Notes: generated by a model from the letters alone, not told the origin. Shown: positions 21,941-41,634, numbered from the stretch's first letter. The stretch: DNA of 41,634 nt from Basidiobolus meristosporus CBS 931.73 (GCA_002104905.1 MCFE01000732.1:1-41634); one strand, 5' to 3'. A program made the numbers and translations.

Positions 21941-23000
21941 TCAGAGCTGGGTTTGTTTACTTATCCATGTATTTTTGATTATATACTTGGTTAAAATGAT
22001 TGAAATTGATGGAGACTTCGATAATTCTGAAGAACGGTGGAAATATGAGATGGTTGAATATTTTATGACTAAAGACCCCAAATGTTGAGCACATTTCTCC
22101 AAAGCCTCCGAAATAGAGCTCATTGACAAGAGCAGCGTTTGTTCACTAAACCAATATACAAGACCGGCACACACTCCAAGTTTTCTTCTGTTGTAAAAAT
22201 TCGGAATTCCACCTAAATATTCACCTAACTTAGTCACTTAGATCATTACCTTCAAACCCTAGAGAATACTGACCAAATTTCTTGTCGGGATTTACTTAGA
22301 ATATTTACCCAGAACATGAAAATTAGATAAGTTGTCCAAACAGCCCCAAACTTTGCAAACATGTTGTTGGGACCTTCCTAACCTTATTCTACGTGGTTGT
22401 TATGCCAAGACCATGTCAAAGTATAAATACTACTTTTACATTCAATAAATCATTAAGTGGAAACCACAGAATCTACTTGTTCTCCCAATCACTTCCAATA
22501 TCTCTAAGACTCTTACAACGTCTTCTACACTGGCCACCCTAACCATATTCTGTGTGAGTTTGGTTGTCTGAGCTTAAGGATGTTGAAGCATATGTCCCAG
22601 TCAGAATCACATGTGCATATCAGTAGATATCCAATATGGATAGAAACTCCTAATAAATGAGGATTAGGGATCATATGCTAAATACTACATGGAGTATATA
22701 TGCTATCTCATAAGCTCTTTCCAGGCCAAGTATGAAGCCTATATACTATCATATAGCAGCATATGGAGTGAAAGCCATCACAAGACCACACTGAAATGGC
22801 ACAAATACCATCAAGAAATCCAATTTGGTAAATGCTGATGGGAACACCTCAATAAAGTATAGAACCTAGCTTTTACAAGAAGTGATCTTGACACTTGGCC
22901 ATTCCATGAGTCTATGTATTCTTTGTAATTGCAGAAACAGACAATTGATCACTGTCCAAGCATAGTTAGCATGCCACTAACTTGCACTCTCAGCATATTA
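21941..23000 (-). pseudogene. Possible decayed membrane-protein gene or repeat relic (AT-rich, CpG-poor)
   Basis: The minus-strand frame gives hydrophobic protein-like text (YAWTVINCLFLQLQRIHRLMEW...FLMVFVPFQCGLVMAFTPYAAI**YIGFILGLERAYEIAYILHVVFSI*SLILIY*EFLSILDIY*YAHV) broken by stops. No CpG was seen from 22521 to 23105. The family was not recognised. Confidence 0.25.
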
Positions 23001-23337
23001 CATAGCTCTGAGTATAGTATTTATACCCAAAGCTCATTCTTAATTGTTAATGCCAATTCAAACTTCAGCATATTGAGGTTTTACTTGGTTGTTCCAAGCA
23101 CTCCACGTTGCAACCTACTAATTGCATACAATTATTTGGATGCAAGCATTAACACAAATCTATTTTAAATCGATTTCAAACTGCATTTTGCTGGCGGAAT
23201 TGTATAAACACTTTGGCAGGGACTCAACTGAAGTGGAGCATTGGTCGTAGCTCGTCATCAACTCCACAAGGGAGTCCTATATCCATTTTTGCGATCCTCG
23301 CCACCTACTACAAGTATAAATGTTACATTTTTCCTTC

Positions 23338-27254: not shown

Positions 27255-28121
27255 ATGGAAACCTATTACGGATACATCGAGTCAGTCCACGATGCTCTTC
27301 TCATTTTTGAGGCCTGCCGACTTGGTTTGCTCCATCGCGTTCAACGCCGGTTGAGCGAGAAAGAAAGGCACCGAATCCGCTCTGGCTCGGTTTTTGTCTG
27401 GGAGGAGGAGGAGTCCGGAATGCGTCGCTGGACGGATGGTCGTACTTGGTCACCATCCAGAGTTCATGGTAGCTTCCTAACCTATCGTGAGCTGGATAAC
27501 AAACGCAAGCCCGGCAAGCCCTCCGACACCCCATCCCCCACTCTCTCTTGTAATGAACCAGATTTTGATAGTCGTTCACACCACTCTGAGGATTTCCATT
27601 ATAAGAACAACGGAATGATCAAACAATCCCTCTCTGTCACCACCATAAACAACCGCAAACTTCACCTTATTTGTTATTTCAACAAGGAGCATGTTTTCAC
27701 CGGAAATCTGAAGCTACCTTCGCAAGACCCTTCGTTGAGCGTGATCACTATTCCTAAAGGGATCTATCCGGACATGACCAATGACTTCTATCCTCCTTCT
27801 CATGGGGACCAACGTGTAAAGTATCGTGAGGATTATGCCAAACCCAATCCATATCACAAGCATGGGCGTGCACCAGAGTACGTGCAAAACCATATCTCAG
27901 CCATCACGAACTACGAGCGCTACCGCCTCCCAAGCCCAGCTAACTCAGAAACCTCTTACCGTGAAATTGACTTGGCACCTCTCCGAGGCTCCAGTAACTA
28001 CTCGCCCACGTTGAACCTACCCCCACCTTCATTGCCATATCAAGATGTTCGCCTGGAGCGCCTTCCATTTAGCGAAGACCGCCGACAATTGGCAGTACTT
28101 ACCACCGTGTTTTCTCTGTGA
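27255..28121 (+). CDS. Gti1/Pac2 (WOPR) family transcriptional regulator
   Basis: METYYGYIESVHDALLIFEACRLG...RIRSGSVFVWEEEESGMRRWTDGRTWSPSRVHGSFLTYREL and the second WOPR block NGMIKQSLSV...LHLICYF. Confidence 0.95.
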   Translation: METYYGYIESVHDALLIFEACRLGLLHRVQRRLSEKERHRIRSGSVFVWEEEESGMRRWTDGRTWSPSRVHGSFLTYRELDNKRKPGKPSDTPSPTLSCNEPDFDSRSHHSEDFHYKNNGMIKQSLSVTTINNRKLHLICYFNKEHVFTGNLKLPSQDPSLSVITIPKGIYPDMTNDFYPPSHGDQRVKYREDYAKPNPYHKHGRAPEYVQNHISAITNYERYRLPSPANSETSYREIDLAPLRGSSNYSPTLNLPPPSLPYQDVRLERLPFSEDRRQLAVLTTVFSL

Positions 28122-32768: not shown

Positions 32769-35080
32769 TAGCATCTGCCATTCGTCACATTTCTTGTTGC
32801 CACGTTGATCTTATGGAGTGGGGTCGCCACTTGGAGTCATAATAAATAAACTTGTTTAATCATCGCCTGTGACCCCTCCAAGAATGCAACCAGTACGATA
32901 GTCTCATGCATACACACGAAAATATTCAGAAGGACTTGTCACATAATATCTGAAAGTTTTCTGGTTCACAAGTAGCTAGGAAGCACTTTTATGGATAACT
33001 ATATATAGTGTTGGTGCTAGGTGGATTATGTTGATTTTAGGGTAAGTGTGAGGGGCATTATTACTGTTGTGTTGATCGTGCCAGAGTGTATAGCATACCT
33101 ATGAAAAATCTCAAACTTCTGATTTTCAGTTGGTCTTTTGCTGGTGTTTTTCCTTCAAATTTTAAGTCGCAATTTTTGGTGGAAGTAGTGAGCAGCTGAT
33201 TTTCAGATTTGGTATGAATGTTAGTTGGCCTAGTCTCCTCCTGGAAGATACGTATACCTGTCTGCCCAACAGCTAGAACCTGAGATATTGCAGGTTGTCA
33301 GTTTTGAGAAACCTGGAGTCCAGCTGATATTATGACGGTATTTTGCTGACCTTTTCTCAATTTTTTGCCAAGGGCGTGAGCCAATGGTACCCTTAGTTTA
33401 GGCGTGGTACCCTCATGTACAAATCTTTCCAGCCAATATATCTAGCAAAGTTTGGTGTATTTCATCATTTGTTTTGCTCCGTGAGAGTTGGCGGAGGCCA
33501 TCATTAGGGTGGCTATGGGACAAAGGTTGAAGCAACAAATGCTGCAATCAATTAGTTTGCAGCCTAAATTATTCCTAGATCTGAGGCTTCTACTTGACTT
33601 GCTAATCTATAAATGCTGACATGATTTAGTTTGTAAAATAATGATTAATTGCTTGAGTTAGCAAAGTCCTAAAAGATATCAAATTTTCAAACGCATCTAA
33701 ACAATCCTAAAACCTGTGCACCATCTGCCAGGATCATTCCCAGAACAATTTTGCCATTAGTTTTGCAAAATTCTACTAACTGTGCTTACATCCTACGATC
33801 TCAATAGAAGCATCAGCTGTATGCTACGCAAATCTTGTGGTTTTCGAAATCACTTGTAATACTCCCCAATATCTTGGGCAATAAGTGAAGTCTGCCATTT
33901 TTGGTATTTATCCCATGAAAAGCTTCCAACCTGGATTGCATAAATATCTTTCTGGTTTTCCTACAGTATTCCAACGGTGTTCTGCTGATCTTTTATATTC
34001 AGCTTTTTAAATATTTATGACTCTGGAATTAGTAAGCTAGCTGCTATCAAATTTGGTGTGACGGTTGCTCTGGCTCAAGTCCATGGGGGGGGAATATGTC
34101 TACTTTCCTTCAAGATTGAGCCTTCAAGGAAACTGTGATTTCTGCAGGTATTCTGCAGGTCCTTGTTGCTTTTTATAGGGTTAGTGGAGGTCAGTGTGGT
34201 ATGCGTACTTGTATTGAGAGTTACCAAGTACAGATCCAAGTAATAGTGCTTAACATAATGTGCACCTAGGAATCTGCTTTTGGGGGGGGGTCAAATTGGA
34301 GCAGTTGCAAATTCTGAATATTCGCAAAGTTGGCTGAGGCTAGAACATCTCAATAAATTAGCCATTTGAGGCTGTTTTCCAACAGTACCATACATAATTG
34401 ATATTCACCCCTGTAGTCACTAGTTAATCTCAGACTGAGCTTGTCATAGTCAGTTAGACTCGCTATTTCAAGTATATTTACTCTTCTAGTTGGATGTCAT
34501 CGGCGTTATACTGACCACTAATGCAATAAAGCACAGGAGTAAGGTCACATATATCCGATGTGTAATCTCGCCTGTGTACTAATTTCTCAATGTGTTTATG
34601 AACAGGTTTAGTCTCGAGCGAGTATACGGTCGATATGCCTCGACTAGCACATCCCTTGAGATATTGATCATAGACAGTATGGCTGGACTGTACCCAAAGT
34701 GGCTAACAGTATTAGATTTGTTCTGGATTCGCTCTCATTGGCCTGCTATACTGCAGTCGATTAGTAAATCGCGTTCTGACAATGTGCTCGTCCGTATTTG
34801 GGAGATTTCACTCGAGTACCGGGATCTACGCTTGAGAGTATATCAATCGAATGTATTCAATAATACGCTACAAATGGTGCTTGTTTGTTGGTTGCCTGAC
34901 GCATGTAATGTAGTGGCCATTAATCCCTCAATTAGCTATTTGTGTGAGTTTTGTCGTAGTAGTAAGTAGCCTGTTAAAGCTATCCTCATTGACTAATTAA
35001 GGCAGTAAAGGTTGCGCAACGGACGCGGTACTAGACAAAAAACAACCTCGGGAACCAACCCTCCCATTCGCTACGCGAAA

Positions 35081-35140: not shown

Positions 35141-36049
35141 ATGAGAGTGCCATTCTACCTCGTAGCTGCTTTATCTCTGTGCTTCCTGAACTCCGTGGCT
35201 GGCCACATGGAGATTCAATCACCCGCGCCTCGTAGATCAACCTTTAGCAAGTACTATAGGTCAAAAGGAAATATTGATTACGATATGAACGGTCCATTGG
35301 GTGTATTTCCTTGCAAAGGCTACAAGCCAGGGCCGGTTGAGTACACATACAAGGCTGGTGACTCTGTGAAAGTTCAATTTGCCCCGGGAAATACGCACCG
35401 AGGGGGACATTGTCAATTTGCACTCTCGTATGACAACGATAAAACATTCGTCGTTTTGAAAACGATTGTCCGTAACTGCTTCAAAAGTGGCCTTACATTC
35501 GACGTTCCAATTCCGGCCACTGCACCTCCCAGCGAGCGAGCTACTTTAGCCTGGACCTGGGTTAATGCGGAAGGTAATCGAGAGTACTACATGAATTGCA
35601 TTGATATCACTATAAACGGCGGAATCCCTGGTGGCAAGATTACCGGACCAAAACTTATGATTGCGAATCTTCCGGGGTACCCTACCATCCCAGAGATGGA
35701 TATTGGTGAAGGTGATGGTCGCGAGTTACTGGATAAACGTCCAATCATCACCATTGAGGGTGCCGCTGGTGGTTCCAACACCAATCTGCCTGTTCATATT
35801 AAGCCATCAGCTACTGGCAAGTCGACTGCAACTATGAATAAACCAACCCACACGCTCCCGATCAAGCCCACCATCACAAGTAATCCGGCAAGAGGCGCAT
35901 GCACTGGAATTCCAGCATGGAATTCCCAAACTGCGTATCATGGCACTCAGAAAGTGACATTAAAGAAGCATTTGTGGCAAGCCAAATGGTGGACACAGCA
36001 CGAAACTCCGGGTGAACAGGGAGTCTGGATAAGCTTGGGTGCGTGCTAA
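35141..36049 (+). CDS. Secreted AA11-like lytic polysaccharide monooxygenase with a Thr/Pro linker and a C-terminal CBM5/12 (ChtBD3) chitin-binding domain
   Basis: The signal peptide ends at SVAG, exposing His1 (HMEIQSP). It has HRGGHCQF and AWTWVNAEGNREYYMNC motifs. The C-terminus AWNSQTAY...KVTLKKHLWQAKWWTQHETPG...W is CBM5/12-like. Confidence 0.85.
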   Translation: MRVPFYLVAALSLCFLNSVAGHMEIQSPAPRRSTFSKYYRSKGNIDYDMNGPLGVFPCKGYKPGPVEYTYKAGDSVKVQFAPGNTHRGGHCQFALSYDNDKTFVVLKTIVRNCFKSGLTFDVPIPATAPPSERATLAWTWVNAEGNREYYMNCIDITINGGIPGGKITGPKLMIANLPGYPTIPEMDIGEGDGRELLDKRPIITIEGAAGGSNTNLPVHIKPSATGKSTATMNKPTHTLPIKPTITSNPARGACTGIPAWNSQTAYHGTQKVTLKKHLWQAKWWTQHETPGEQGVWISLGAC

Positions 36050-36477
36050 TATGCTGTGAATTGTGCAATAGACAAATATTTGAATAAACCAATGATTTTG
36101 ACTATTGAAAAGGGGCCTAACTCTACCAAGGAGTGGAGATGACTTGTACTGTCATTAAACGGTAATAAACTTGTTCCGTAGGATAGTGCCACACTGAGCC
36201 ATGAGTGCCAAATGATGCCATAGTGTTCCAGGGAGGCCAAGTGGACCAGTACATGGCCACAGAGTGTGAAGCAAAGTTCTTCATCTTCATGCAAAGCAGC
36301 CCCTATGTTTCACCTGTTGTGCTGGAGAAAATTCATTTTTGACCTTTTTTTTGGGTCAATGTTGTGCAGGATGTGTAAGAGGACAGAAGGACTGAAGAAA
36401 TGCATCTGGTACTCAATACCCATGGCACTCTGAATCTAGCTCCTGTAGCTTGTAACATTTCACAAAAATGCATAGCA

Positions 36478-36575
36478 CTATCTTGGTCCACTGGTACTAT
36501 CTGGCACTATATCTAAATATTAGCCCTAAAGTAAAACCTATACAAAACACCTACAGTGCCAGTGGACCAAGATAG
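36478..36575. repeat. Perfect 17-bp inverted repeat (CTATCTTGGTCCACTGG at 36478-36494; CCAGTGGACCAAGATAG at 36559-36575), MITE- or foldback-like
   Basis: Direct reading. The match extends inward with mismatches. Confidence 0.8.
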
Positions 36576-37163
36576 GGGAGGGAAAGTCACCAAGTTGGTG
36601 AAATCTTTATCTGAGTCAAGAACTAATCTAAGTACAAATAAAGAAGCCAATCAAGAAGTATAGAACTTCTCTAATAAGTAATCTAATTTATGTTTTGTTT
36701 CATCTCTAATGTTTGTTTCAATAAAGTAAAGCTCATCAGGGGTAAATATAAAATTCAATGGTTTTGGGGGAAGTACAAATTGTAGATGTTTCTGATCAAT
36801 ATAATCCAAGACTGGAACCCAGCCTGGGATTAGGTGTAGTAGGAAAGGTGTGTGGACTTGTAAGTAGCTCTGCCACATAGATCTTAGATGGTCCTGAGCC
36901 AGTAGTCTTGGTTTCTCAGCTTTTTGAAGTTTTGAAGCAAGCTCTGTTACTACAGCAGAGCCAACCAGGGTGTGCCAGCAAGAAGATTTCAGGGAGGAGT
37001 TAGATTGAAGCCATTGTTTGATGGAGGGGTTATGTGATTTCTGAAGTTTGACTAGGAAGGAAGCACGGAGATAGACCATTTGGATTTGGTATGGGTAGAA
37101 CCCAAAGGCCCTGTTAGTTGCATGGATATAGGGAGATACTGGAAGATAAGGTACCAAGGATCT
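36576..37163 (-). mobile_element. 5'-truncated divergent sister copy of the telomeric LINE (ORF2 C-terminus plus 3' UTR)
   Basis: ORF 36651-37157 aligns colinearly with the last ~165 aa of distal ORF2 (VPYLPVSPYIHATNRAFGFYPY vs VPHLPECPYRHAILGAFGFMPY; SCW; EKP; WQSYLQVHTPF vs WQQYLQQHTPF), about 35-40% identity by eye. It shares the 3' UTR blocks GGCTTCTTT and ATAAAGATTTCACC-loop-GGTGACT. Confidence 0.9.
36585..36610 (-). other. Conserved 3'-terminal hairpin of the proximal copy (ATAAAGATTTCACC-AACTT-GGTGACT)
   Basis: Matches the distal-copy block at 37187-37211 with the same stem and a different loop. Confidence 0.75.
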
Positions 37164-37184
37164 GGGTTAGGGTTAGGGGGGGGG
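37164..37184 (+). repeat. Interstitial telomeric remnant GGG-TTAGGG-TTA-G9 between the two retroelements
   Basis: Direct reading. It has the same polarity as the terminal telomere and lies exactly at the element-element junction. Confidence 0.9.
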
Positions 37185-37186
37185 AC

Positions 37187-37211
37187 AGTCACCAACAGGT
37201 GAAATCTTTAT
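37187..37211 (-). other. Conserved 3'-terminal hairpin of the distal copy (ATAAAGATTTCACC-TGTT-GGTGACT)
   Basis: TCACC/GGTGA stem, shared with the proximal copy. Confidence 0.75.
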
Positions 37212-37236
37212 TTCAGTTGAAACAAAGAAGCCAGCG

Positions 37237-40005
37237 CTACTGTTGTAGCTTTGATACAAGAGTGTGTAGCTGAGGGGAATTTGTAGGTAAGTTAATAAGA
37301 AGTGATGATAGTTCTTCAGTGCTCAAGACACTGTTCAGTGGGAAGGGGGGTAGCAAGAGAGGTAAGAATGACTTGTGAACAACATTAATGAGGGGAATGT
37401 GATAAGGATTGATATTCATCATAAAGGGAGTGTGCTGCTGCAGATATTGCTGCCAAAGGTCTGTCAAGTACTTCAGGTAGGCCAGCTTGGGTTTTTCTGA
37501 CTGCAGAATAAATTCAGCAAACTTCTTGACTTCAGGATCTCCAAGTATAGTTCTCCAGCAGGAGCCAGGTGTTGTGTGGTGTGTTCTCTTCCAGGCCTTA
37601 ATCAGTGGGTTGTTGCAGTTGTGAAGTCTGAGGTATAATCTGGTTCTAAGGTAGAGAAGTCTGATCTTATAGGGCATAAACCCAAAAGCACCAAGAATAG
37701 CATGTCTGTAGGGGCATTCAGGCAAATGAGGCACCAAGGAGGTAATGCACCATACTGCAAACTTGTCAAGCTTAGTGCAGTCTCTAGAAGTAAGAGAGAG
37801 AAGTGGTAAGCCAAATTCCAGGACAGGGAAAACAAACTGCTTGAGTAGAAGGAGGCAGCTTGGAGCTGAAGTTGTAGGAGGAGTAACAGCCAGTAGCTTG
37901 TGGAGTGCCTGTCTTGCCAGGATAATTCTCTTCTTCAGGTGTGCTCCAGAGTCTAGTCCAGTAGGAAGGAAAGGAAAGCCAAGATATGTAGCAGAAACCT
38001 GAGCAGGTAGAGTGGAGTTCTCCAAGTTGATGGGAGAGCCCAAAGGTACTGTCTTTGCAATGGAAAGCTGGAGATTATTCTTCTGCAGATACTGGTGGAT
38101 GGTCTGGGAGTCTTGTTGCACATTGGAGGAGGATATTCTGATGTCATCAGCAAAGAGAGTAACCAGGCAGTCAGCTGAGAGTCTTGGGAAATCATTCAGG
38201 AAGATGGCAAACAGTATAGGACCAAGCACAGAGCCTTGAACCACTCCATTAGGAACTGAGAACACAGCTGATTGCTCACTTGGGTGCAGAATTCTTGCTT
38301 GTGGATCCAGAAACAGAGACCTGACAAGGAGGGTGAGAGAGGTACTGGAGAAGCATTGCAACTTGGACCAAAGCAGATTTCTGTCAACTGAATCAAAGGC
38401 CTTAGTAATATCAAACAGAACAGAGGGATACTTGCACTGGAGAGAGTGATCTTGGCTAAGTATGACTGCATATTCCAAGGAGAGGCCAGGAACAAAGCCA
38501 AACTGTGCAGGATGAAACTTGAGGGAGTCAGAGTAGAGCTCCTGAGCAAGCAGAAGCTCAAACACCTTTCTGCAGGTGGGCAGCAGAGATATTGGCCTGT
38601 AGAAGCTAGGATCCAGGTGCTTTCCTTTACCCTTGTACAGTGGCAGAACATTTGCAAAGGACCATTCCTCAGGAGTAGAAAGCTGGGCTGAGCATTGCTG
38701 AAACAGTGGAAGCAGAAGTGCAGACATGGCCTTGGTACTAGTCTTCAGAAGCTCATAGGAGATTGTGTCCACACCTGGAGCAGTAGAGTTGGGAAGCCTC
38801 TTGAGCACATTATGGATTCTCCTTTGATCAAGTGCAAGTGGGATGGGCAGAGTCTTGAAGTCAGGATGAAAGCCAGGAGTTGAGTACTGCTTTGTAGAGA
38901 AGAAGATGTTAGCCAGCTGTTCTGTTGAAGGTAACTTCCTGGAAGAGGGCCTCATTGCCCTGTAGAGTCTTGATACTGTTCTTGTTATAGAGTTGGAAGA
39001 TTGCAGAGGCAAAGAACTCATAATATGATCCCAGAGCTGAGTATGCAGAGTGTGGTGAATTGCCTGGGAGTGGTGTATTGCTGTCAGGAGGAGTTTCTCT
39101 GTTTTTGGGTTAGGGAAACTCAGGTAGCTTTGTTGCAGGGCTGAAACAATGGATTCCCATTTTCTTGAGGTAACAGCAGTAGTCTTGCATGGCAGTGAGA
39201 GGGAGGCAGACACCAGAATCAGATGCTTCACAAAGAGCCAGGCATAGTTGAGATCATCTGGCAGAGAAAGTAGCAAACTGGCAAGCTTCAAGTAGTTCCC
39301 AAAGTCTTTCTTCTGATTCTTGGTAGCTTTGTGGGTGAGCACAGTAAGTTTTGGCAGCTTCTTCTTCACAACTGGTTGCATAGAAAGGGACCAGGCTGGG
39401 TGGTCAGAGGCTCTCAAGGATCCTAACTCAGCTCCAGAGAATTGCTTAACTTCATTCACAAAGTAGAGGGCAGCAGCAGAAGGGCAGATCCAGTCAACAC
39501 ATCTTTTCTCAGATTGAGCACCTAGTGATAGCAGGTGGCTTTCTCTCAGGAAGTTCAGTAGGAATGTAGACCTTGGCTTCATTCTTGCAGTCAGAGTAGT
39601 CTTGTTCTCAGGATGGGGAATGTTGAGATCTCCAAGCAAGATAACAGGTGTTGATATAGATTGCTGGTATTGCTGAACCTTCTGGCATATAACTTGCACT
39701 TCCTGAAGGGCAAGACTTGGAGGCAGATAGCAGAGCACAAGACTGATAGTTGGCAACTGGAGAGCAGCACAGTAAGGGGAGTAAAGAGGAACACAGAGCT
39801 GAGGAGTATTGATGGTAGAAGAGATGAAGCAGATAGAGAAGGTATTCTTTGTTCTAGGAGTAGAAAAGCAATATAGATTAGTCAAAAGTATAGAAGGTAG
39901 CTGAACATCAATCAAACACAGGAGGGAAAATCTTGAAAGAAGTCTCTCTAGAGTTGGTCTTGATGGCTGTATGCTGTTGCAGTTAAGCAACAGAACTTCA
40001 GGTAG
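37237..40005 (-). CDS. ORF2: APE-like endonuclease plus non-LTR reverse transcriptase; no AUG at its start
   Basis: APE motifs LLLNCNSI, YLPP, GDLN, VDWI and SDH. RT motifs APGVDTISYELLK, YRPISLL, QFGF, FDITKAFDSV, GVVQGSVLGPILFAIFLND, LFADD and YLGF. No C-terminal CCHC knuckle or RNase H was recognised. Confidence 0.95.
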   Translation of the reverse strand, partial: LPEVLLLNCNSIQPSRPTLERLLSRFSLLCLIDVQLPSILLTNLYCFSTPRTKNTFSICFISSTINTPQLCVPLYSPYCAALQLPTISLVLCYLPPSLALQEVQVICQKVQQYQQSISTPVILLGDLNIPHPENKTTLTARMKPRSTFLLNFLRESHLLSLGAQSEKRCVDWICPSAAALYFVNEVKQFSGAELGSLRASDHPAWSLSMQPVVKKKLPKLTVLTHKATKNQKKDFGNYLKLASLLLSLPDDLNYAWLFVKHLILVSASLSLPCKTTAVTSRKWESIVSALQQSYLSFPNPKTEKLLLTAIHHSQAIHHTLHTQLWDHIMSSLPLQSSNSITRTVSRLYRAMRPSSRKLPSTEQLANIFFSTKQYSTPGFHPDFKTLPIPLALDQRRIHNVLKRLPNSTAPGVDTISYELLKTSTKAMSALLLPLFQQCSAQLSTPEEWSFANVLPLYKGKGKHLDPSFYRPISLLPTCRKVFELLLAQELYSDSLKFHPAQFGFVPGLSLEYAVILSQDHSLQCKYPSVLFDITKAFDSVDRNLLWSKLQCFSSTSLTLLVRSLFLDPQARILHPSEQSAVFSVPNGVVQGSVLGPILFAIFLNDFPRLSADCLVTLFADDIRISSSNVQQDSQTIHQYLQKNNLQLSIAKTVPLGSPINLENSTLPAQVSATYLGFPFLPTGLDSGAHLKKRIILARQALHKLLAVTPPTTSAPSCLLLLKQFVFPVLEFGLPLLSLTSRDCTKLDKFAVWCITSLVPHLPECPYRHAILGAFGFMPYKIRLLYLRTRLYLRLHNCNNPLIKAWKRTHHTTPGSCWRTILGDPEVKKFAEFILQSEKPKLAYLKYLTDLWQQYLQQHTPFMMNINPYHIPLINVVHKSFLPLLLPPFPLNSVLSTEELSSLLINLPTNSPQLHTLVSKLQQ

Positions 40006-40008
40006 TCA
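39974..40008 (-). other. Candidate stop-codon readthrough signal: UGA-CUA, 12-nt spacer, 7-bp stem-loop CUGUUGC-UUAACU-GCAACAG
   Basis: The minus strand reads GCC TGA CTA CCT GAA GTT CTG TTG CTT AAC TGC AAC AGC. ORF1 and ORF2 are in the same frame. Confidence 0.6.
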
Positions 40009-41448
40009 GGCAGAGGTTGTAGCTTCTTCAGAGGCAGCATTGATAATGTGACCTGCAGAGTCCCAGAGCTCTTCAAATGGTGCATCACTTAAGTCAGCAA
40101 GGAGGGAAATGGCATGATTCTTGAGGAAGTATGCCACATCATAGGAGGGGGCTTGTCTCTTGATGGCAGCAAAGAAAGACAGAATGGCAACATGGGCTGG
40201 AGGCTTGTTGAACAGTAGAGAGTCAGAGGATTCAGATTCTTCAGGCACTATCTTGAAGTCAGTTTTCAGCCAGTTAAGGTTCTTCTCCACAAAGGCAACA
40301 AATGGGTCAGCAATGTTTTGGTCTAGGATAACCTCCAGAATCTTCCCTTTTCTCCAGGCCAGGTTGACAATTCTTGAGAGCTGAATATTGCATGCCTTGA
40401 GTGCTTTCCTGATGTTGGAAATGGGAGTCCAGGGAACTTGCTTCAAGTACACCACAGTCCAGGTAGAAGCTTGTGGTAGGTTTGCTGGGGGCTTGTAAGT
40501 CCTTCTGTGTTGCAATGGAGCTGCAGTAGTCAGATTGGAGTCCACATTCTCAGTAGAAGGTTTTCTTGATGTGTCTTGCTGAATAGTACTGGAGCTGGAT
40601 GTGCTGATAATTCTTGCTAGAACCTTGCCTGCATAGGTCTGAGGTATAGCTGAGGTGACTGTAGAGGTGTTGGCAGCTGGTGCAGGTGGAGAGGCAGAAA
40701 CTGAAGCAGGAACTGAGGTCACCTGGGAGAAGGTAGTGGAAGCAGGTTTTCTGGGAGGAACAGAGTTCACTATCCAGTAGTTCTGTAAAACACTGGAGTA
40801 GCTTTTCTGTGGAACAGGATCTTGCTCTTGAACAGGAACAGAAGCAGGAGGCTGGGGCTGAGCAGTAGTGGTAAGGCAGTGGCACTCCAAGGAAGCTTTT
40901 TGCAAGGCATCTCTGGCAGTTTTCAGGGCAGTATTGGCTTCATTCTTGAGCTTCTTGCATTGAGCATCCAGTCTCTTGTTTTCAATAGCCAGGGCAGTAT
41001 TGGCAGCCTCTAAATCAGCAATTCTCTTCTCAACTGCAAGGAATCTCTGAAGAAATGCATCAGTAGAAATGCTGGCATCTGGAAGAGCAGTGGCAGGAAT
41101 AGAGTCCATTGACAGTGGGCTTCTTGGAGGCAAGGAAAGTGGACTGGCAGATTCAGGCACAAAAGGAGATATCCTGGCAGGAGGAGAAGGAGTATCCAAG
41201 GCAGTAACAGAGGCAATTCTTGTTGGTGAAGCAGCAGCAGGGGAGGCAAGCCTGTTCAGAAACTGGGTAGGAGAGAGTGCTTGAGGAGAGGGAGTCTTCA
41301 GCTTGGCAAGCATGTCTTCCATCAGAGTGATACCAATATTCCTGGTGCATTTGCAGAGAAAAGTAAGCTTCCTGAGTCTGCCAGCTCTTCCATTCCTTCT
41401 GATAGTTCCTTTGTTTCCACAGTTGGGCAAGAAATCTTCTTGACAGAC
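40006..41448 (-). CDS. ORF1 (gag-like): Cys-containing N-terminus, coiled coil, Pro/Ser/Thr-rich linker and a C-terminal RRM-like domain; frame is open right up to the telomere
   Basis: The frame runs from GTC at 41448 (VCQEDFLPNCGNKG...FLCKC) to TGA at 40006-40008. Coiled coil FLAVEKRIADLEAANTALAIENKRL. The first in-frame ATG is at 41322. Confidence 0.85.
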   Translation of the reverse strand, partial: VCQEDFLPNCGNKGTIRRNGRAGRLRKLTFLCKCTRNIGITLMEDMLAKLKTPSPQALSPTQFLNRLASPAAASPTRIASVTALDTPSPPARISPFVPESASPLSLPPRSPLSMDSIPATALPDASISTDAFLQRFLAVEKRIADLEAANTALAIENKRLDAQCKKLKNEANTALKTARDALQKASLECHCLTTTAQPQPPASVPVQEQDPVPQKSYSSVLQNYWIVNSVPPRKPASTTFSQVTSVPASVSASPPAPAANTSTVTSAIPQTYAGKVLARIISTSSSSTIQQDTSRKPSTENVDSNLTTAAPLQHRRTYKPPANLPQASTWTVVYLKQVPWTPISNIRKALKACNIQLSRIVNLAWRKGKILEVILDQNIADPFVAFVEKNLNWLKTDFKIVPEESESSDSLLFNKPPAHVAILSFFAAIKRQAPSYDVAYFLKNHAISLLADLSDAPFEELWDSAGHIINAASEEATTSA

Positions 41449-41634
41449 TTAGGGTTAGGGTTAGGGTTAGGGTTAGGGTTAGGGTTAGGTTAGGGTTAGG
41501 GTTAGGGTTAGGGTTAGGGTTAGGGTTAGGGTTAGGGTTAGGGTTAGGGTTAGGGTTAGGGTTAGGGTTAGGGTTAGGGTTAGGGTTAGGGTTAGGGTTA
41601 GGGTTAGGGTTAGGGTTAGGGTTAGGGTTAGGGT
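41449..41634 (+). repeat. Telomere (TTAGGG)n: about 30 perfect units plus one TTAGG variant at 41485-41489
   Basis: Direct reading. It runs to the end of the window in the G-rich 5'->3' outward polarity expected at a chromosome end. Confidence 0.99.

What the first reader, a model, noticed from the sequence alone, without database searches (positions are those of the whole stretch)
37237..41448. A ~4.2-kb intact coding element with zero CpG dinucleotides
A line-by-line manual scan found no CG between 37237 and 41448. The nearest one is at 37235-37236 in the 3' UTR, and the proximal copy has a single CG at 37066-37067. GC content is moderate (roughly 45% by eye), GpC, CpA and TpG are abundant, and host genes in the window are CpG-rich. 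All Arg codons must therefore be AGA/AGG, and no NCG codons are used, yet ~1400 codons stay open. CpA abundance argues against Neurospora-type RIP. The pattern fits long-term 5mCpG deamination under purifying selection, leaving an element with no CpG target for methylation silencing, i.e. a possible methylation-escape strategy.
Basis: partly seen in the sequence, partly recalled or inferred. Interest (0 to 1): 0.82.

Follow-up and report, generated by a model that had tools for sequence, protein, structure and literature searches.

The report
CpG-free telomeric retrotransposon of Basidiobolus
The CpG-free stretch is a slightly truncated copy of a LINE retrotransposon that inserts only into telomere repeats at chromosome ends of Basidiobolus fungi; the whole family has kept its transcribed body almost free of CpG over a very long time, probably because the host methylates CpG there and so mutates it.

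Summary
The last CpG in the window is at 37235; there are none from 37237 to the window end (about 217 expected from base composition, about 162 at the host's ratio).

The stretch is a minus-strand non-LTR (LINE) retrotransposon, 37179-41448. It has ORF1, then an ORF2 with an APE-type endonuclease and a reverse transcriptase. Its 5' end abuts the terminal (TTAGGG)n tract (41449-41634). Its 3' end joins 2.5 telomere units, followed by a truncated copy of a second subfamily.

The host genes are Basidiobolus-like, and a family member lies in B. ranarum.

Relatives from about eight subfamilies (35-80% protein identity, synonymous sites saturated, dN/dS 0.09-0.20) are also CpG-free in their bodies. 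All end in the same 3' motif joined to CCCTAA repeats.

The copy is not intact. It lacks the roughly 640-nt 5' leader and the first 22 ORF1 codons. That leader holds the family's only conserved CpGs.

The best reading is CpG-directed mutation pressure, probably from DNMT1-class methylation, filtered by purifying selection. An adaptive "methylation escape" is neither shown nor excluded.

It is a new telomere-specific LINE family with unusually complete CpG loss.

The parts
41449..41634 (+). Terminal telomere tract, (TTAGGG)n, about 31 units with one short variant unit. It runs to the end of the window, which is taken to be the chromosome end.
37179..41448 (-). 5'-truncated copy (4270 nt) of a telomere-repeat-specific APE-type LINE. 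It has 1 CpG where 217 are expected. Against full-length relatives it lacks about 640 nt of 5' leader and the first 22 codons of ORF1.
40006..41448 (-). ORF1 (480 codons plus a TGA stop), open from the telomere junction onward. It holds part of an N-terminal Cys-rich knuckle, a conserved internal Met at 41320-41322, a coiled coil at about 40903-41049 and a conserved C-terminal domain at about 40009-40458. It has no Pfam family.
37237..40005 (-). ORF2 (922 codons plus a TAG stop), in the same frame as ORF1, with no internal stop or frameshift. The AlphaFold model (pLDDT 86.8) matches full-length human LINE-1 ORF2p.
39376..40005 (-). APE-type endonuclease domain (ORF2 residues 1-210). N8, Y93, D126, N128, D171, D201 and H202 are kept. 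The catalytic Glu position holds Asp (D33).
37972..38610 (-). Reverse transcriptase domain (Pfam RVT_1, E 2.8e-24), with the FADD motif at D620-D621.
39971..39996 (-). Predicted hairpin about 9 nt downstream of the ORF1 TGA stop. Four of its 10 pairs show compensatory changes among six subfamilies. It is a candidate readthrough stimulator.
37179..37236 (-). 3' UTR. It holds the element's only CpG (37235-37236), an AATAAA, the family-invariant CACC-loop-GGTG hairpin and a terminal C run. There is no poly(A).
37164..37178 (-). Internal telomere relic, 2.5 CCCTAA units, joining the 3' end of the distal copy to the next copy.
36575..37163 (-). 5'-truncated copy (589 nt, ORF2 C-terminus plus 3' UTR) of a second subfamily like L010/P0005. 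It has 1 CpG where 21 are expected. It is 38% identical in protein to the distal copy and 68% identical in DNA to L010 and L004:1-522.
36178..36574 (.). CpG-free stretch of unknown origin (0 CpG where 18.6 are expected) between the last host gene and the element array. It holds a 21-nt inverted repeat (36478-36498 and 36555-36575).
35141..36049 (+). Last host gene (CBM_5_12 chitin-binding module), with normal CpG content (42 seen, 53 expected). It marks the sharp proximal edge of the CpG-poor zone.

Best explanation
The CpG-free stretch is a terminal, slightly 5'-truncated copy of a LINE retrotransposon family that lives in the telomere repeats of Basidiobolus fungi.

Shown:
- The element has ORF1 plus an ORF2 with an APE-type endonuclease and a reverse transcriptase.
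- Its 3' end is always joined to CCCTAA repeats, and copies form head-to-tail arrays with the 5' end toward the chromosome end.
- Across about eight deeply diverged subfamilies the body holds almost no CpG, while the proteins evolve under strong purifying selection.
- Host genes, and the nearest LINEs outside the family, have normal CpG.

Inferred, on insertion:
- The element RNA ends in telomere-complementary bases.
- These bases pair with the TTAGGG strand, which is either nicked by the endonuclease or is the natural end.
- That strand then primes reverse transcription, so each new copy is added distally.
- The copy is later eroded and recapped by telomerase.

Inferred, on CpG loss:
- The host methylates CpG in the genomic copies with DNMT1-class machinery.
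- Methyl-CpG mutates to TpG or CpA far faster than CpG is regenerated.
- Purifying selection discards copies whose proteins are damaged.
- Surviving lineages therefore use AGR for Arg, no NCG codons and no C|G codon boundaries.
- CpG persists only in the short 5' leader, a probable promoter that is either protected or constrained.

A body that cannot be CpG-methylated is then a consequence of this process. It is not necessarily an evolved strategy.
For: Identity:
- Pfam RVT_1 at E 2.8e-24 and a weak Exo_endo_phos_2 match.
- PDB profile hit to LINE-1 ORF2p at E 1.8e-21.
- Fold hits to full-length L1 ORF2p at E 1e-27, and for the endonuclease alone to TRAS1 EN, APE1 and L1 EN.
- Catalytic residues conserved.

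Telomere specificity:
- A TTAGGG tract at 41449-41634 and 2.5 units at 37164-37178.
- The same 3' motif followed by TAACCC in L002-L009.
- Head-to-tail arrays in the window, L004 and L005.

Host:
- The GH9 gene is 78% identical to one from B. ranarum.
- An ORF1 homologue lies in B. ranarum assembly GCA_040143965.1.

Family-wide CpG loss:
- 2 CpG where 861 are expected, over four subfamilies.
- L015 has 0 of 108 expected. L013 and L014 have CpG only in the leader or flank.
- The outgroup LINEs L011 and L012 have o/e 1.35 and 1.08.

Long maintenance under selection: pS is 0.65-0.80 and dN/dS is 0.09-0.20.

Mutation-type signals:
- TG o/e is 1.3-1.6 and CA o/e is 1.1-1.2.
- T3 replaces C3 before G-codons.
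- Leader CpG align with TG and CA in another subfamily.
- In L010, 10 of the 14 remaining coding CpG are Arg CGN.
- Truncated copies are also CpG-free.

Host machinery and precedent:
- B. meristosporus encodes DNMT1, UHRF1, HELLS and two Dim2-like genes (PMC10538959 supplement).
- A CpG-to-TpG bias in fungal transposons linked to DNMT1-class enzymes is documented (PMC3318451, PMC4352252).
Against: - No methylation data exist for this host. Reviews describe early-diverging fungi as having near-undetectable 5mC (PMC13297926).
- A CpG o/e of about 0.002 lies far below the roughly 0.2 equilibrium of methylated vertebrate DNA. With 292 synonymous CpG-creating transitions available per copy, it needs a loss-to-gain rate ratio of about 100 or more. 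Spontaneous deamination alone may not reach that.
- L010 keeps 14 CpG although it comes from the same sequencing run as the CpG-free L006.
- The third-position and TG/CA signals would also arise under selection against CpG combined with an ordinary transition bias.
- Whether other transposon families of this host are CpG-poor could not be tested.
Confidence: 0.55

Rival explanations
1. Adaptive CpG avoidance, which is the reader's 'methylation escape'. Copies that acquire CpG are methylated and silenced and leave no descendants. Selection among element lineages, rather than mutation pressure, would then keep the body CpG-free.
For: - The depletion is extreme: o/e is about 0.002 over 18 kb.
- It has been maintained through saturation of synonymous sites.
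- 292 synonymous one-step routes to CpG exist in each copy.
- Boundary avoidance is complete, 0 of 307.
- This is more complete than any mutational equilibrium I know of.
Against: - Full-length relatives keep 2-4 CpG in the 5' leader, partly conserved between subfamilies, which is where silencing would act.
- One or a few body CpG are unlikely to carry a selective cost.
- Truncated, presumably dead copies and a 397-nt unrelated flank are CpG-free too.
- L010 tolerates 14 CpG.
Confidence: 0.2
2. An active, repeat-directed, CpG-specific hypermutation, RIP-like or MIP-like and run by the host's Dim2-like or DNMT1-like enzymes. It would strip CpG from every repeated copy in one or a few sexual cycles. 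Only CpG-free lineages would then stay functional.
For: - The required rate ratio of about 100 or more fits an enzymatic process better than spontaneous decay.
- B. meristosporus has two Dim2-like paralogues besides DNMT1.
- TpCpG hypermutation of repeats is known in Pucciniomycotina (PMC3318451).
Against: - L006 and L010 come from one sequencing run but differ in CpG content.
- No RID/DNMT4 was found in B. meristosporus.
- No recently hit copies carrying many TG/CA differences were seen.
- No such process has been described in Zoopagomycota.
Confidence: 0.15
3. CpG is avoided for a reason unrelated to DNA methylation. Examples are an RNA-level CpG sensor of the ZAP kind, or a composition constraint tied to the telomeric G-rich/C-rich strand asymmetry.
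For: - The sense strand is C-rich and G-poor (C 0.286, G 0.178), continuing the strand bias of the telomere.
- 5mC is reported as scarce in early-diverging fungi.
Against: - No such sensor is known in fungi (my own knowledge).
- Skew alone does not remove one dinucleotide: GpC o/e is 1.0-1.16.
- There are no G-quadruplex motifs on either strand.
- The non-transcribed flank 36178-36574 is also CpG-free.
Confidence: 0.06
4. Chance or an artefact, such as a chimeric assembly or contamination from a CpG-poor genome.
For: None beyond the fact that the junction 36050-36600 is unique sequence that I could not verify independently.
Against: - Poisson P is about 1e-70.
- Independent contigs from at least 11 runs or assemblies show the same trait.
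- A family member lies in a named B. ranarum assembly.
Confidence: 0.01

Closest known systems
TRAS1 and SART1 of Bombyx mori (telomeric-repeat-specific LINEs of the R1 clade)
   Same: - An APE-type endonuclease plus reverse transcriptase in ORF2, with an ORF1 upstream.
- Insertion only into telomerase-made repeats, in a fixed orientation and with a precise junction.
- Coexistence with telomerase repeats.
- The top fold hit for the endonuclease model is TRAS1 EN, 1wdu.
   Different: - The host is a fungus with TTAGGG repeats, not TTAGG.
- There is no poly(A); copies end in a C run.
- The catalytic Glu is replaced by Asp.
- ORF1 and ORF2 are in frame across a TGA stop.
- The 1wdu hit is tied with APE1 and L1 EN, and no sequence-level hit to TRAS1 EN came back. 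Clade membership is therefore not shown.
- CpG-free status is not reported for TRAS or SART.
HeT-A, TART and TAHRE of Drosophila
   Same: Head-to-tail arrays at the very chromosome end, with the 3' end toward the centromere and 5' ends truncated or eroded (PMC5537684, listed).
   Different: Drosophila has no telomerase repeats and the elements themselves form the telomere. Here each copy is flanked by TTAGGG units and the end is capped by a telomerase-type tract.
MoTeR (Pyricularia oryzae) and FoTeR (Fusarium oxysporum), fungal telomere-targeted retrotransposons
   Same: Fungal non-LTR elements found only in TTAGGG telomeres. They show purifying selection on functional copies alongside decayed copies (PMC12857005; PMC10088271).
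   Different: From my own knowledge, these belong to the clade with a restriction-like endonuclease. The present family has an APE-type endonuclease. FoTeR copies decay by classical RIP, whereas here there is no RIP signature and CpG is lost completely.
Cnl1 of Cryptococcus neoformans (recalled from memory, not tested here)
   Same: A LINE that accumulates in subtelomeric arrays of a fungus whose transposons are CpG-methylated.
   Different: No Cnl1 protein came back as a named hit. The Cryptococcus telomere repeat differs. I could test no comparison.
CpG-biased decay of methylated transposons in fungi (Microbotryum, Tuber, rusts) and CpG-poor bodies of vertebrate LINE-1
   Same: C-to-T change at CpG in methylated repeats linked to DNMT1-class enzymes (PMC3318451, PMC4352252). 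As in vertebrate L1, the body is CpG-poor while the 5' leader keeps CpG.
   Different: In those cases the depletion is partial and is seen mostly in decaying copies. Here it is essentially complete (o/e about 0.002), holds in coding-competent copies and is shared by subfamilies diverged to synonymous saturation.

Membership tests
Non-LTR (LINE) retrotransposon, APE type | Reverse transcriptase domain with the catalytic xADD motif | tested here: met
   Pfam RVT_1 at E 2.8e-24. D620-D621 are invariant in 49 sequences. L1 ORF2p is matched by sequence at E 1.8e-21 and by fold at E 1e-27.
Non-LTR (LINE) retrotransposon, APE type | N-terminal apurinic/apyrimidinic-type endonuclease with a full catalytic set | tested here: inconclusive
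   The fold is confirmed (pLDDT 90; 1wdu, APE1 and L1 EN at E about 1e-10). N8, Y93, D126, N128, D171, D201 and H202 are kept. The metal-binding Glu is Asp in 3 of 3 family members, against Glu in 39 of 39 outgroups. Activity was not testable.
Non-LTR (LINE) retrotransposon, APE type | No terminal repeats, and variable 5' truncation of copies | tested here: met
   No long direct or inverted terminal repeats were found. The window copy, the proximal copy, L004:1-523 and the L004 main copy are truncated at different 5' points.
Telomeric-repeat-specific LINEs (functional class: TRAS/SART-like) | Copies flanked by telomere repeats in one fixed orientation with a reproducible junction | tested here: met
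   The window copy is flanked by TTAGGG or CCCTAA repeats on both sides. Nine 3' ends in seven loci show the same motif followed by a C run and TAACCC.
Telomeric-repeat-specific LINEs (functional class: TRAS/SART-like) | Absence of copies outside telomeric or subtelomeric arrays | not testable with these tools
   Only short contigs and one window are available. No complete host assembly could be scanned.
R1 clade (TRAS/SART) | Phylogenetic placement of the reverse transcriptase within R1 | not tested
   No named reference set was available. The nearest detectable relatives are unnamed or insect LINEs at 31% identity or less. TRAS1 EN did not return in the PDB sequence search.
Neurospora-type RIP | CpA depleted and TpA enriched in repeats | tested here: not met
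   TpA o/e is 0.58-0.75 and CpA o/e is 1.07-1.24 in all copies.
Methylation-driven CpG decay | CpG deficit with TpG/CpA excess, confined to the repeat and not the neighbouring genes | tested here: met
   Element o/e is 0.005 against 0.75 for host DNA. The last host gene has 42 CpG where 53 are expected. TG o/e is 1.64 and CA o/e is 1.14.
Methylation-driven CpG decay | The host has CpG maintenance methylation and the element is methylated | not testable with these tools
   Only indirect evidence exists: DNMT1, UHRF1, HELLS and Dim2-like genes are listed for B. meristosporus, and the paper's 5mC column is blank for that species.
Telomeric retrotransposons with strand-biased G-quadruplex motifs (PMC10088271) | Canonical G4 motifs on the strand continuous with the G-overhang | tested here: not met
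   There are 0 motifs of the form G3+N1-7 repeated four times on either strand in all 11 copies, although G exceeds C on that strand.

The most novel reading that the evidence does not exclude
Basidiobolus belongs to the early-diverging fungi, which are thought to have little 5mC. It would run a CpG-directed genome defence strong enough to erase every CpG from the body of a still-functional, telomere-dedicated LINE family. That family has adapted by coding without CpG. It keeps a few conserved CpG only in its promoter-like leader, and it makes ORF2 by programmed UGA readthrough as an ORF1-ORF2 fusion. It may also contribute to chromosome-end maintenance alongside telomerase.
Probability: 0.3. 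Interest if true: 0.8.

Novelty: new variant of a known kind. Interest (0 to 1): 0.66.

Why it matters
Telomere-specific LINEs are known from only a handful of lineages. This adds an APE-type family in Zoopagomycota, in a genus with TTAGGG telomeres.

The family offers a natural case for an old question: how far can CpG-directed mutation or silencing reshape a transposon that stays functional? Eight subfamilies have diverged to synonymous saturation, yet their bodies still hold almost no CpG, and only the leader keeps them.

The case also predicts CpG methylation in a fungal group where 5mC is thought to be marginal. Existing long-read data could test that directly.

The invariant TGA-CT junction between the in-frame ORF1 and ORF2 is a candidate for programmed readthrough in a LINE.

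Tried and rejected
- Neurospora-type RIP: rejected on dinucleotide ratios.
- G-quadruplex enrichment, as reported for other telomeric elements: none found.
- Rfam scan of the window: no hit.
- PDB sequence profile search for a TRAS1, R1 or L1 endonuclease match: only the reverse transcriptase part scored. The fold search was needed for the endonuclease.
- Origin of 36178-36574: blastn and tblastn against all family loci and proteins found nothing.
- Covariation support for the 3' UTR hairpins: the pairs are invariant, so there is no evidence either way.
- Other transposon families of the same host: L011 and L012, the nearest outgroup LINEs, come from other runs and serve only as a clade-level control.
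- A TG-to-CA exchange-rate test to separate hypermutation from selection: dropped. Every such change in coding sequence alters an amino acid, and all pairs are saturated.
- Literature searches for a described Basidiobolus telomeric element or a CpG-free retrotransposon family: nothing found.
- The large protein-representative search was not used. It carries no names and the claim does not rest on absence of relatives.
- Borderline step, declared: the null model redrew synonymous codons at random in memory, only to count expected CpG.
ORF1 and ORF2 were always queried apart.

Full report
**Observation**

A direct count finds 1416 CpG in the 41,634-nt window. The last is at 37235-37236, and there are none from 37237 to the end.

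The CpG-poor zone is therefore 36178-41634, with 2 CpG in 5457 nt. It starts 130 nt after the last host gene (35141-36049), which has 42 CpG against 53 expected.

For the element proper (37179-41448, GC 46.4%) 217 CpG are expected from base composition and 162 at the host ratio of 0.75. One is present. The Poisson P for zero is about 1e-70. GpC is not depleted (o/e 1.16).

At codon level:
- All 58 Arg codons are AGA/AGG (host 34%).
- None of 471 Ser/Pro/Thr/Ala codons is NCG (host 17-21%).
- None of 307 codons before a G-starting codon ends in C, against 363 of 1093 elsewhere.
- Random redrawing of synonymous codons with host usage gives 86 +/- 7 and 122 +/- 8 CpG for the two ORFs. This was a null model only; nothing was kept.

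**What it is**

The right end of the window is a telomere: (TTAGGG)n from 41449 to 41634 on the plus strand. The CpG-free stretch is a minus-strand non-LTR retrotransposon.

- ORF1 (41448-40006) has no Pfam family. It has a Cys-rich N-terminal motif, a coiled coil and a conserved C-terminal domain.
- ORF2 (40005-37237) has Pfam RVT_1 at E 2.8e-24 and a weak endonuclease match.
- A profile of the family hits human LINE-1 ORF2p in the PDB at E 1.8e-21.
- An AlphaFold model (pLDDT 86.8) matches full-length L1 ORF2p at E 1e-27.
- A model of residues 1-215 (pLDDT 90.3) matches the APE fold. TRAS1 endonuclease (1wdu) ranks first, essentially tied with APE1, ExoIII and L1 EN.
- Seven catalytic residues of the endonuclease are conserved. 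The metal-binding Glu position holds Asp in all three family members that cover it, against Glu in 39 of 39 outgroup LINEs.

The 3' UTR (37236-37179) carries an AATAAA, an invariant CACC-loop-GGTG hairpin and a run of C. It has no poly(A) and is followed at once by 2.5 CCCTAA units (37178-37164).

Next comes a 589-nt 5'-truncated copy of a different subfamily (37163-36575). It is 38% identical in protein to the distal copy and 68% identical in DNA to L010 and to L004:1-522. Then comes 397 nt of CpG-free DNA of unknown origin.

**Host**

The other ORFs of the window are fungal: Gti1/Pac2, Mcp5_PH, GH9, amidase, MFS and CBM5/12. The GH9 protein is 78% identical to a Basidiobolus ranarum protein and 57-58% identical to further Basidiobolus paralogues.

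An ORF1 homologue (53% identity) is annotated as a hypothetical protein in B. ranarum assembly GCA_040143965.1. The window is not human-like, and no bar on human sequence applied.

**The family**

ORF2 and ORF1 searches returned only unnamed proteins from short ENA, Logan and NCBI contigs, plus the B. ranarum entry. I fetched 13 loci representing about eight subfamilies. ORF2 identity is 46-80% and ORF1 identity goes down to 35%.

Every locus that reaches the 3' end shows the same terminal motif, a C run of 5-9 and then TAACCC. Often only 1-2.5 telomere units separate it from the next sequence. L004, L005 and the window show head-to-tail arrays.

Pairwise codon comparisons give pS of 0.65-0.80, which is saturated, and dN/dS of 0.09-0.20.

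CpG is missing throughout:
- WIN, L001, L002 and L004 together hold 2 CpG where 861 are expected (o/e 0.002).
- L015 has 0 of 108 expected. L013 and L014 have CpG only in the leader or upstream flank.
- Two subfamilies are less extreme. L009 has 18 CpG, 12 of them clustered in the variable ORF1 linker. L010 has 14 coding CpG, 10 of them in Arg CGN codons.
- The nearest LINEs outside the family (L011, L012) have CpG o/e of 1.35 and 1.08.

CpG loss is therefore a trait of this family, or of its host, and not of the wider clade.

**State of the window copy**

Both reading frames are open, with no internal stops or frameshifts. Against L004, L005, L009 and L001, the copy lacks the roughly 640-nt 5' leader and the first 22 codons of ORF1. 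Its sequence starts directly at the telomere tract.

That fits either incomplete reverse transcription or terminal erosion followed by telomerase capping. It is therefore not an intact element. Among the relatives, L002's ORF2 is interrupted once by an in-frame stop.

**The 5' leader**

Full-length relatives carry the family's only CpG there: L005 has 4, L009 has 3, L013 has 4 and L014 has 2. A CGT a few bases upstream of a conserved A-rich core is kept in three subfamilies. Two further L005 CpG align with TG and with CA in L009.

**How it most likely works**

*Targeting (inferred from anatomy).* The plus strand reads telomere repeats, then the antisense of the element from its 3' end to its 5' end, then telomere repeats again. 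This is the product expected if the TTAGGG strand primes reverse transcription of an RNA whose 3' end carries telomere-complementary bases. That strand could be nicked by the endonuclease, or it could be the natural end. The orientation equals that of Drosophila HeT-A/TART and of one of the two Bombyx families.

*CpG loss.* The data show a force that has removed or excluded CpG continuously while the proteins stayed under selection.

Points in favour of mutation pressure through CpG methylation:
- The TG plus CA excess (about 180) is of the size of the missing CpG.
- Before G-codons, 75% of the missing C3 share is taken by T3. That is more than proportional (chi-square about 16, my arithmetic).
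- Leader CpG align with TG and CA in another subfamily.
- CpG persists in L010 mainly in Arg CGN codons, where both transition products are damaging.
- Truncated copies and an unrelated flank are CpG-free.
- The leader keeps its CpG, as promoters of methylated genomes do.
- DNMT1, UHRF1, HELLS and two Dim2-like genes are listed for B. meristosporus.
- CpG-to-TpG bias in fungal transposons is known.

Points against:
- No methylation data exist for the host, and early-diverging fungi are described as 5mC-poor.
- With 292 synonymous CpG-creating transitions available per copy and at most about 1.6 standing CpG per copy, the loss-to-gain ratio must be roughly 100 or more. That suggests an enzymatic hypermutation or added selection.
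- L010 and the CpG-free L006 come from one sequencing run.

I therefore put about 0.55 on methylation-driven mutation plus purifying selection, 0.2 on adaptive avoidance, 0.15 on a RIP-like CpG-specific process and the rest on other causes. These are partly overlapping.

**Noticed besides**

In 8 of 8 subfamilies ORF1 ends in TGA followed by CT, and ORF2 follows in the same frame. The endonuclease fold starts about five codons later, and only one subfamily has an ATG there. In five of six subfamilies a hairpin starts about 9 nt after the stop, and four of its ten pairs show compensatory changes. This is the classical layout of programmed stop-codon readthrough. It is an inference.

**Comparison and novelty**

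The element works like the telomeric-repeat-specific LINEs: TRAS/SART, and in array structure HeT-A/TART. Its lifestyle resembles the fungal MoTeR and FoTeR elements, which use another endonuclease type (endonuclease type from my own knowledge).

Membership in the R1 clade was not tested, because no named references were available. Cnl1 of Cryptococcus was in my mind as a comparator but did not return as a named hit.

I found no paper describing this family or a CpG-free retrotransposon family. I rate it a new variant of a known kind.

The only altered sequences were the in-memory random synonymous redraws, of which only counts were printed; I flag this in case it is judged borderline.

Noticed in passing
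window 40006-40008 with 39971-39996 (minus strand); L001, L002, L004, L009, L010, L014, L015 at the ORF1 ends: ORF1 ends in TGA followed by CT in 8 of 8 subfamilies, and ORF2 follows in the same frame with no usable ATG in 7 of 8. In 5 of 6 subfamilies a hairpin with compensatory changes lies about 9 nt downstream. This looks like programmed UGA readthrough that makes an ORF1-ORF2 fusion.
   Followed up: partly
L005:1-100, L009:60-160, L013:100-170, L014:440-470: The 5' leader of full-length relatives holds the family's only CpG (2-4 per copy). One CGT next to a conserved A-rich core is kept in three subfamilies. Two others align with TG and CA. The window copy lacks this leader.
   Followed up: partly
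window ORF2 residue 33 (about 39907-39909, minus strand): The metal-binding Glu of the APE endonuclease fold is Asp in all three family members that cover it, against Glu in 39 of 39 outgroup LINEs.
   Followed up: partly
window 36178-36574: A 397-nt stretch with 0 CpG (18.6 expected) and no similarity to any family member. It holds a 21-nt inverted repeat (36478-36498 and 36555-36575) whose right arm overlaps the end of the truncated copy.
   Followed up: partly
L010 (whole) versus L006, both from run ERR14042384: One subfamily keeps 14 coding CpG, 10 of them in Arg CGN codons. Another subfamily from the same sequencing run has none.
   Followed up: partly
L009:849-1230: Twelve CpG are clustered in the variable linker of ORF1, with a host-like spread over codon positions. 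This may be a recently acquired or exchanged segment.
   Followed up: no
window 22301-23100 and 33501-34400: These are AT-rich patches with few CpG (2 where 27 are expected; 6 where about 29 are expected). The first lies in a roughly 5-kb ORF-poor stretch upstream of the Gti1/Pac2 regulator gene (27255-28121). No transposon similarity was found.
   Followed up: no
window 37179-37236 and all 3' ends: Copies have an AATAAA about 30 nt before their end but no poly(A). They end in a C run of 5-9 followed directly by TAACCC.
   Followed up: partly
window 35141-41634: The subtelomere is very short. The last host gene ends only 5.6 kb from the chromosome end, and everything distal to it is element-derived or CpG-free.
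   Followed up: no
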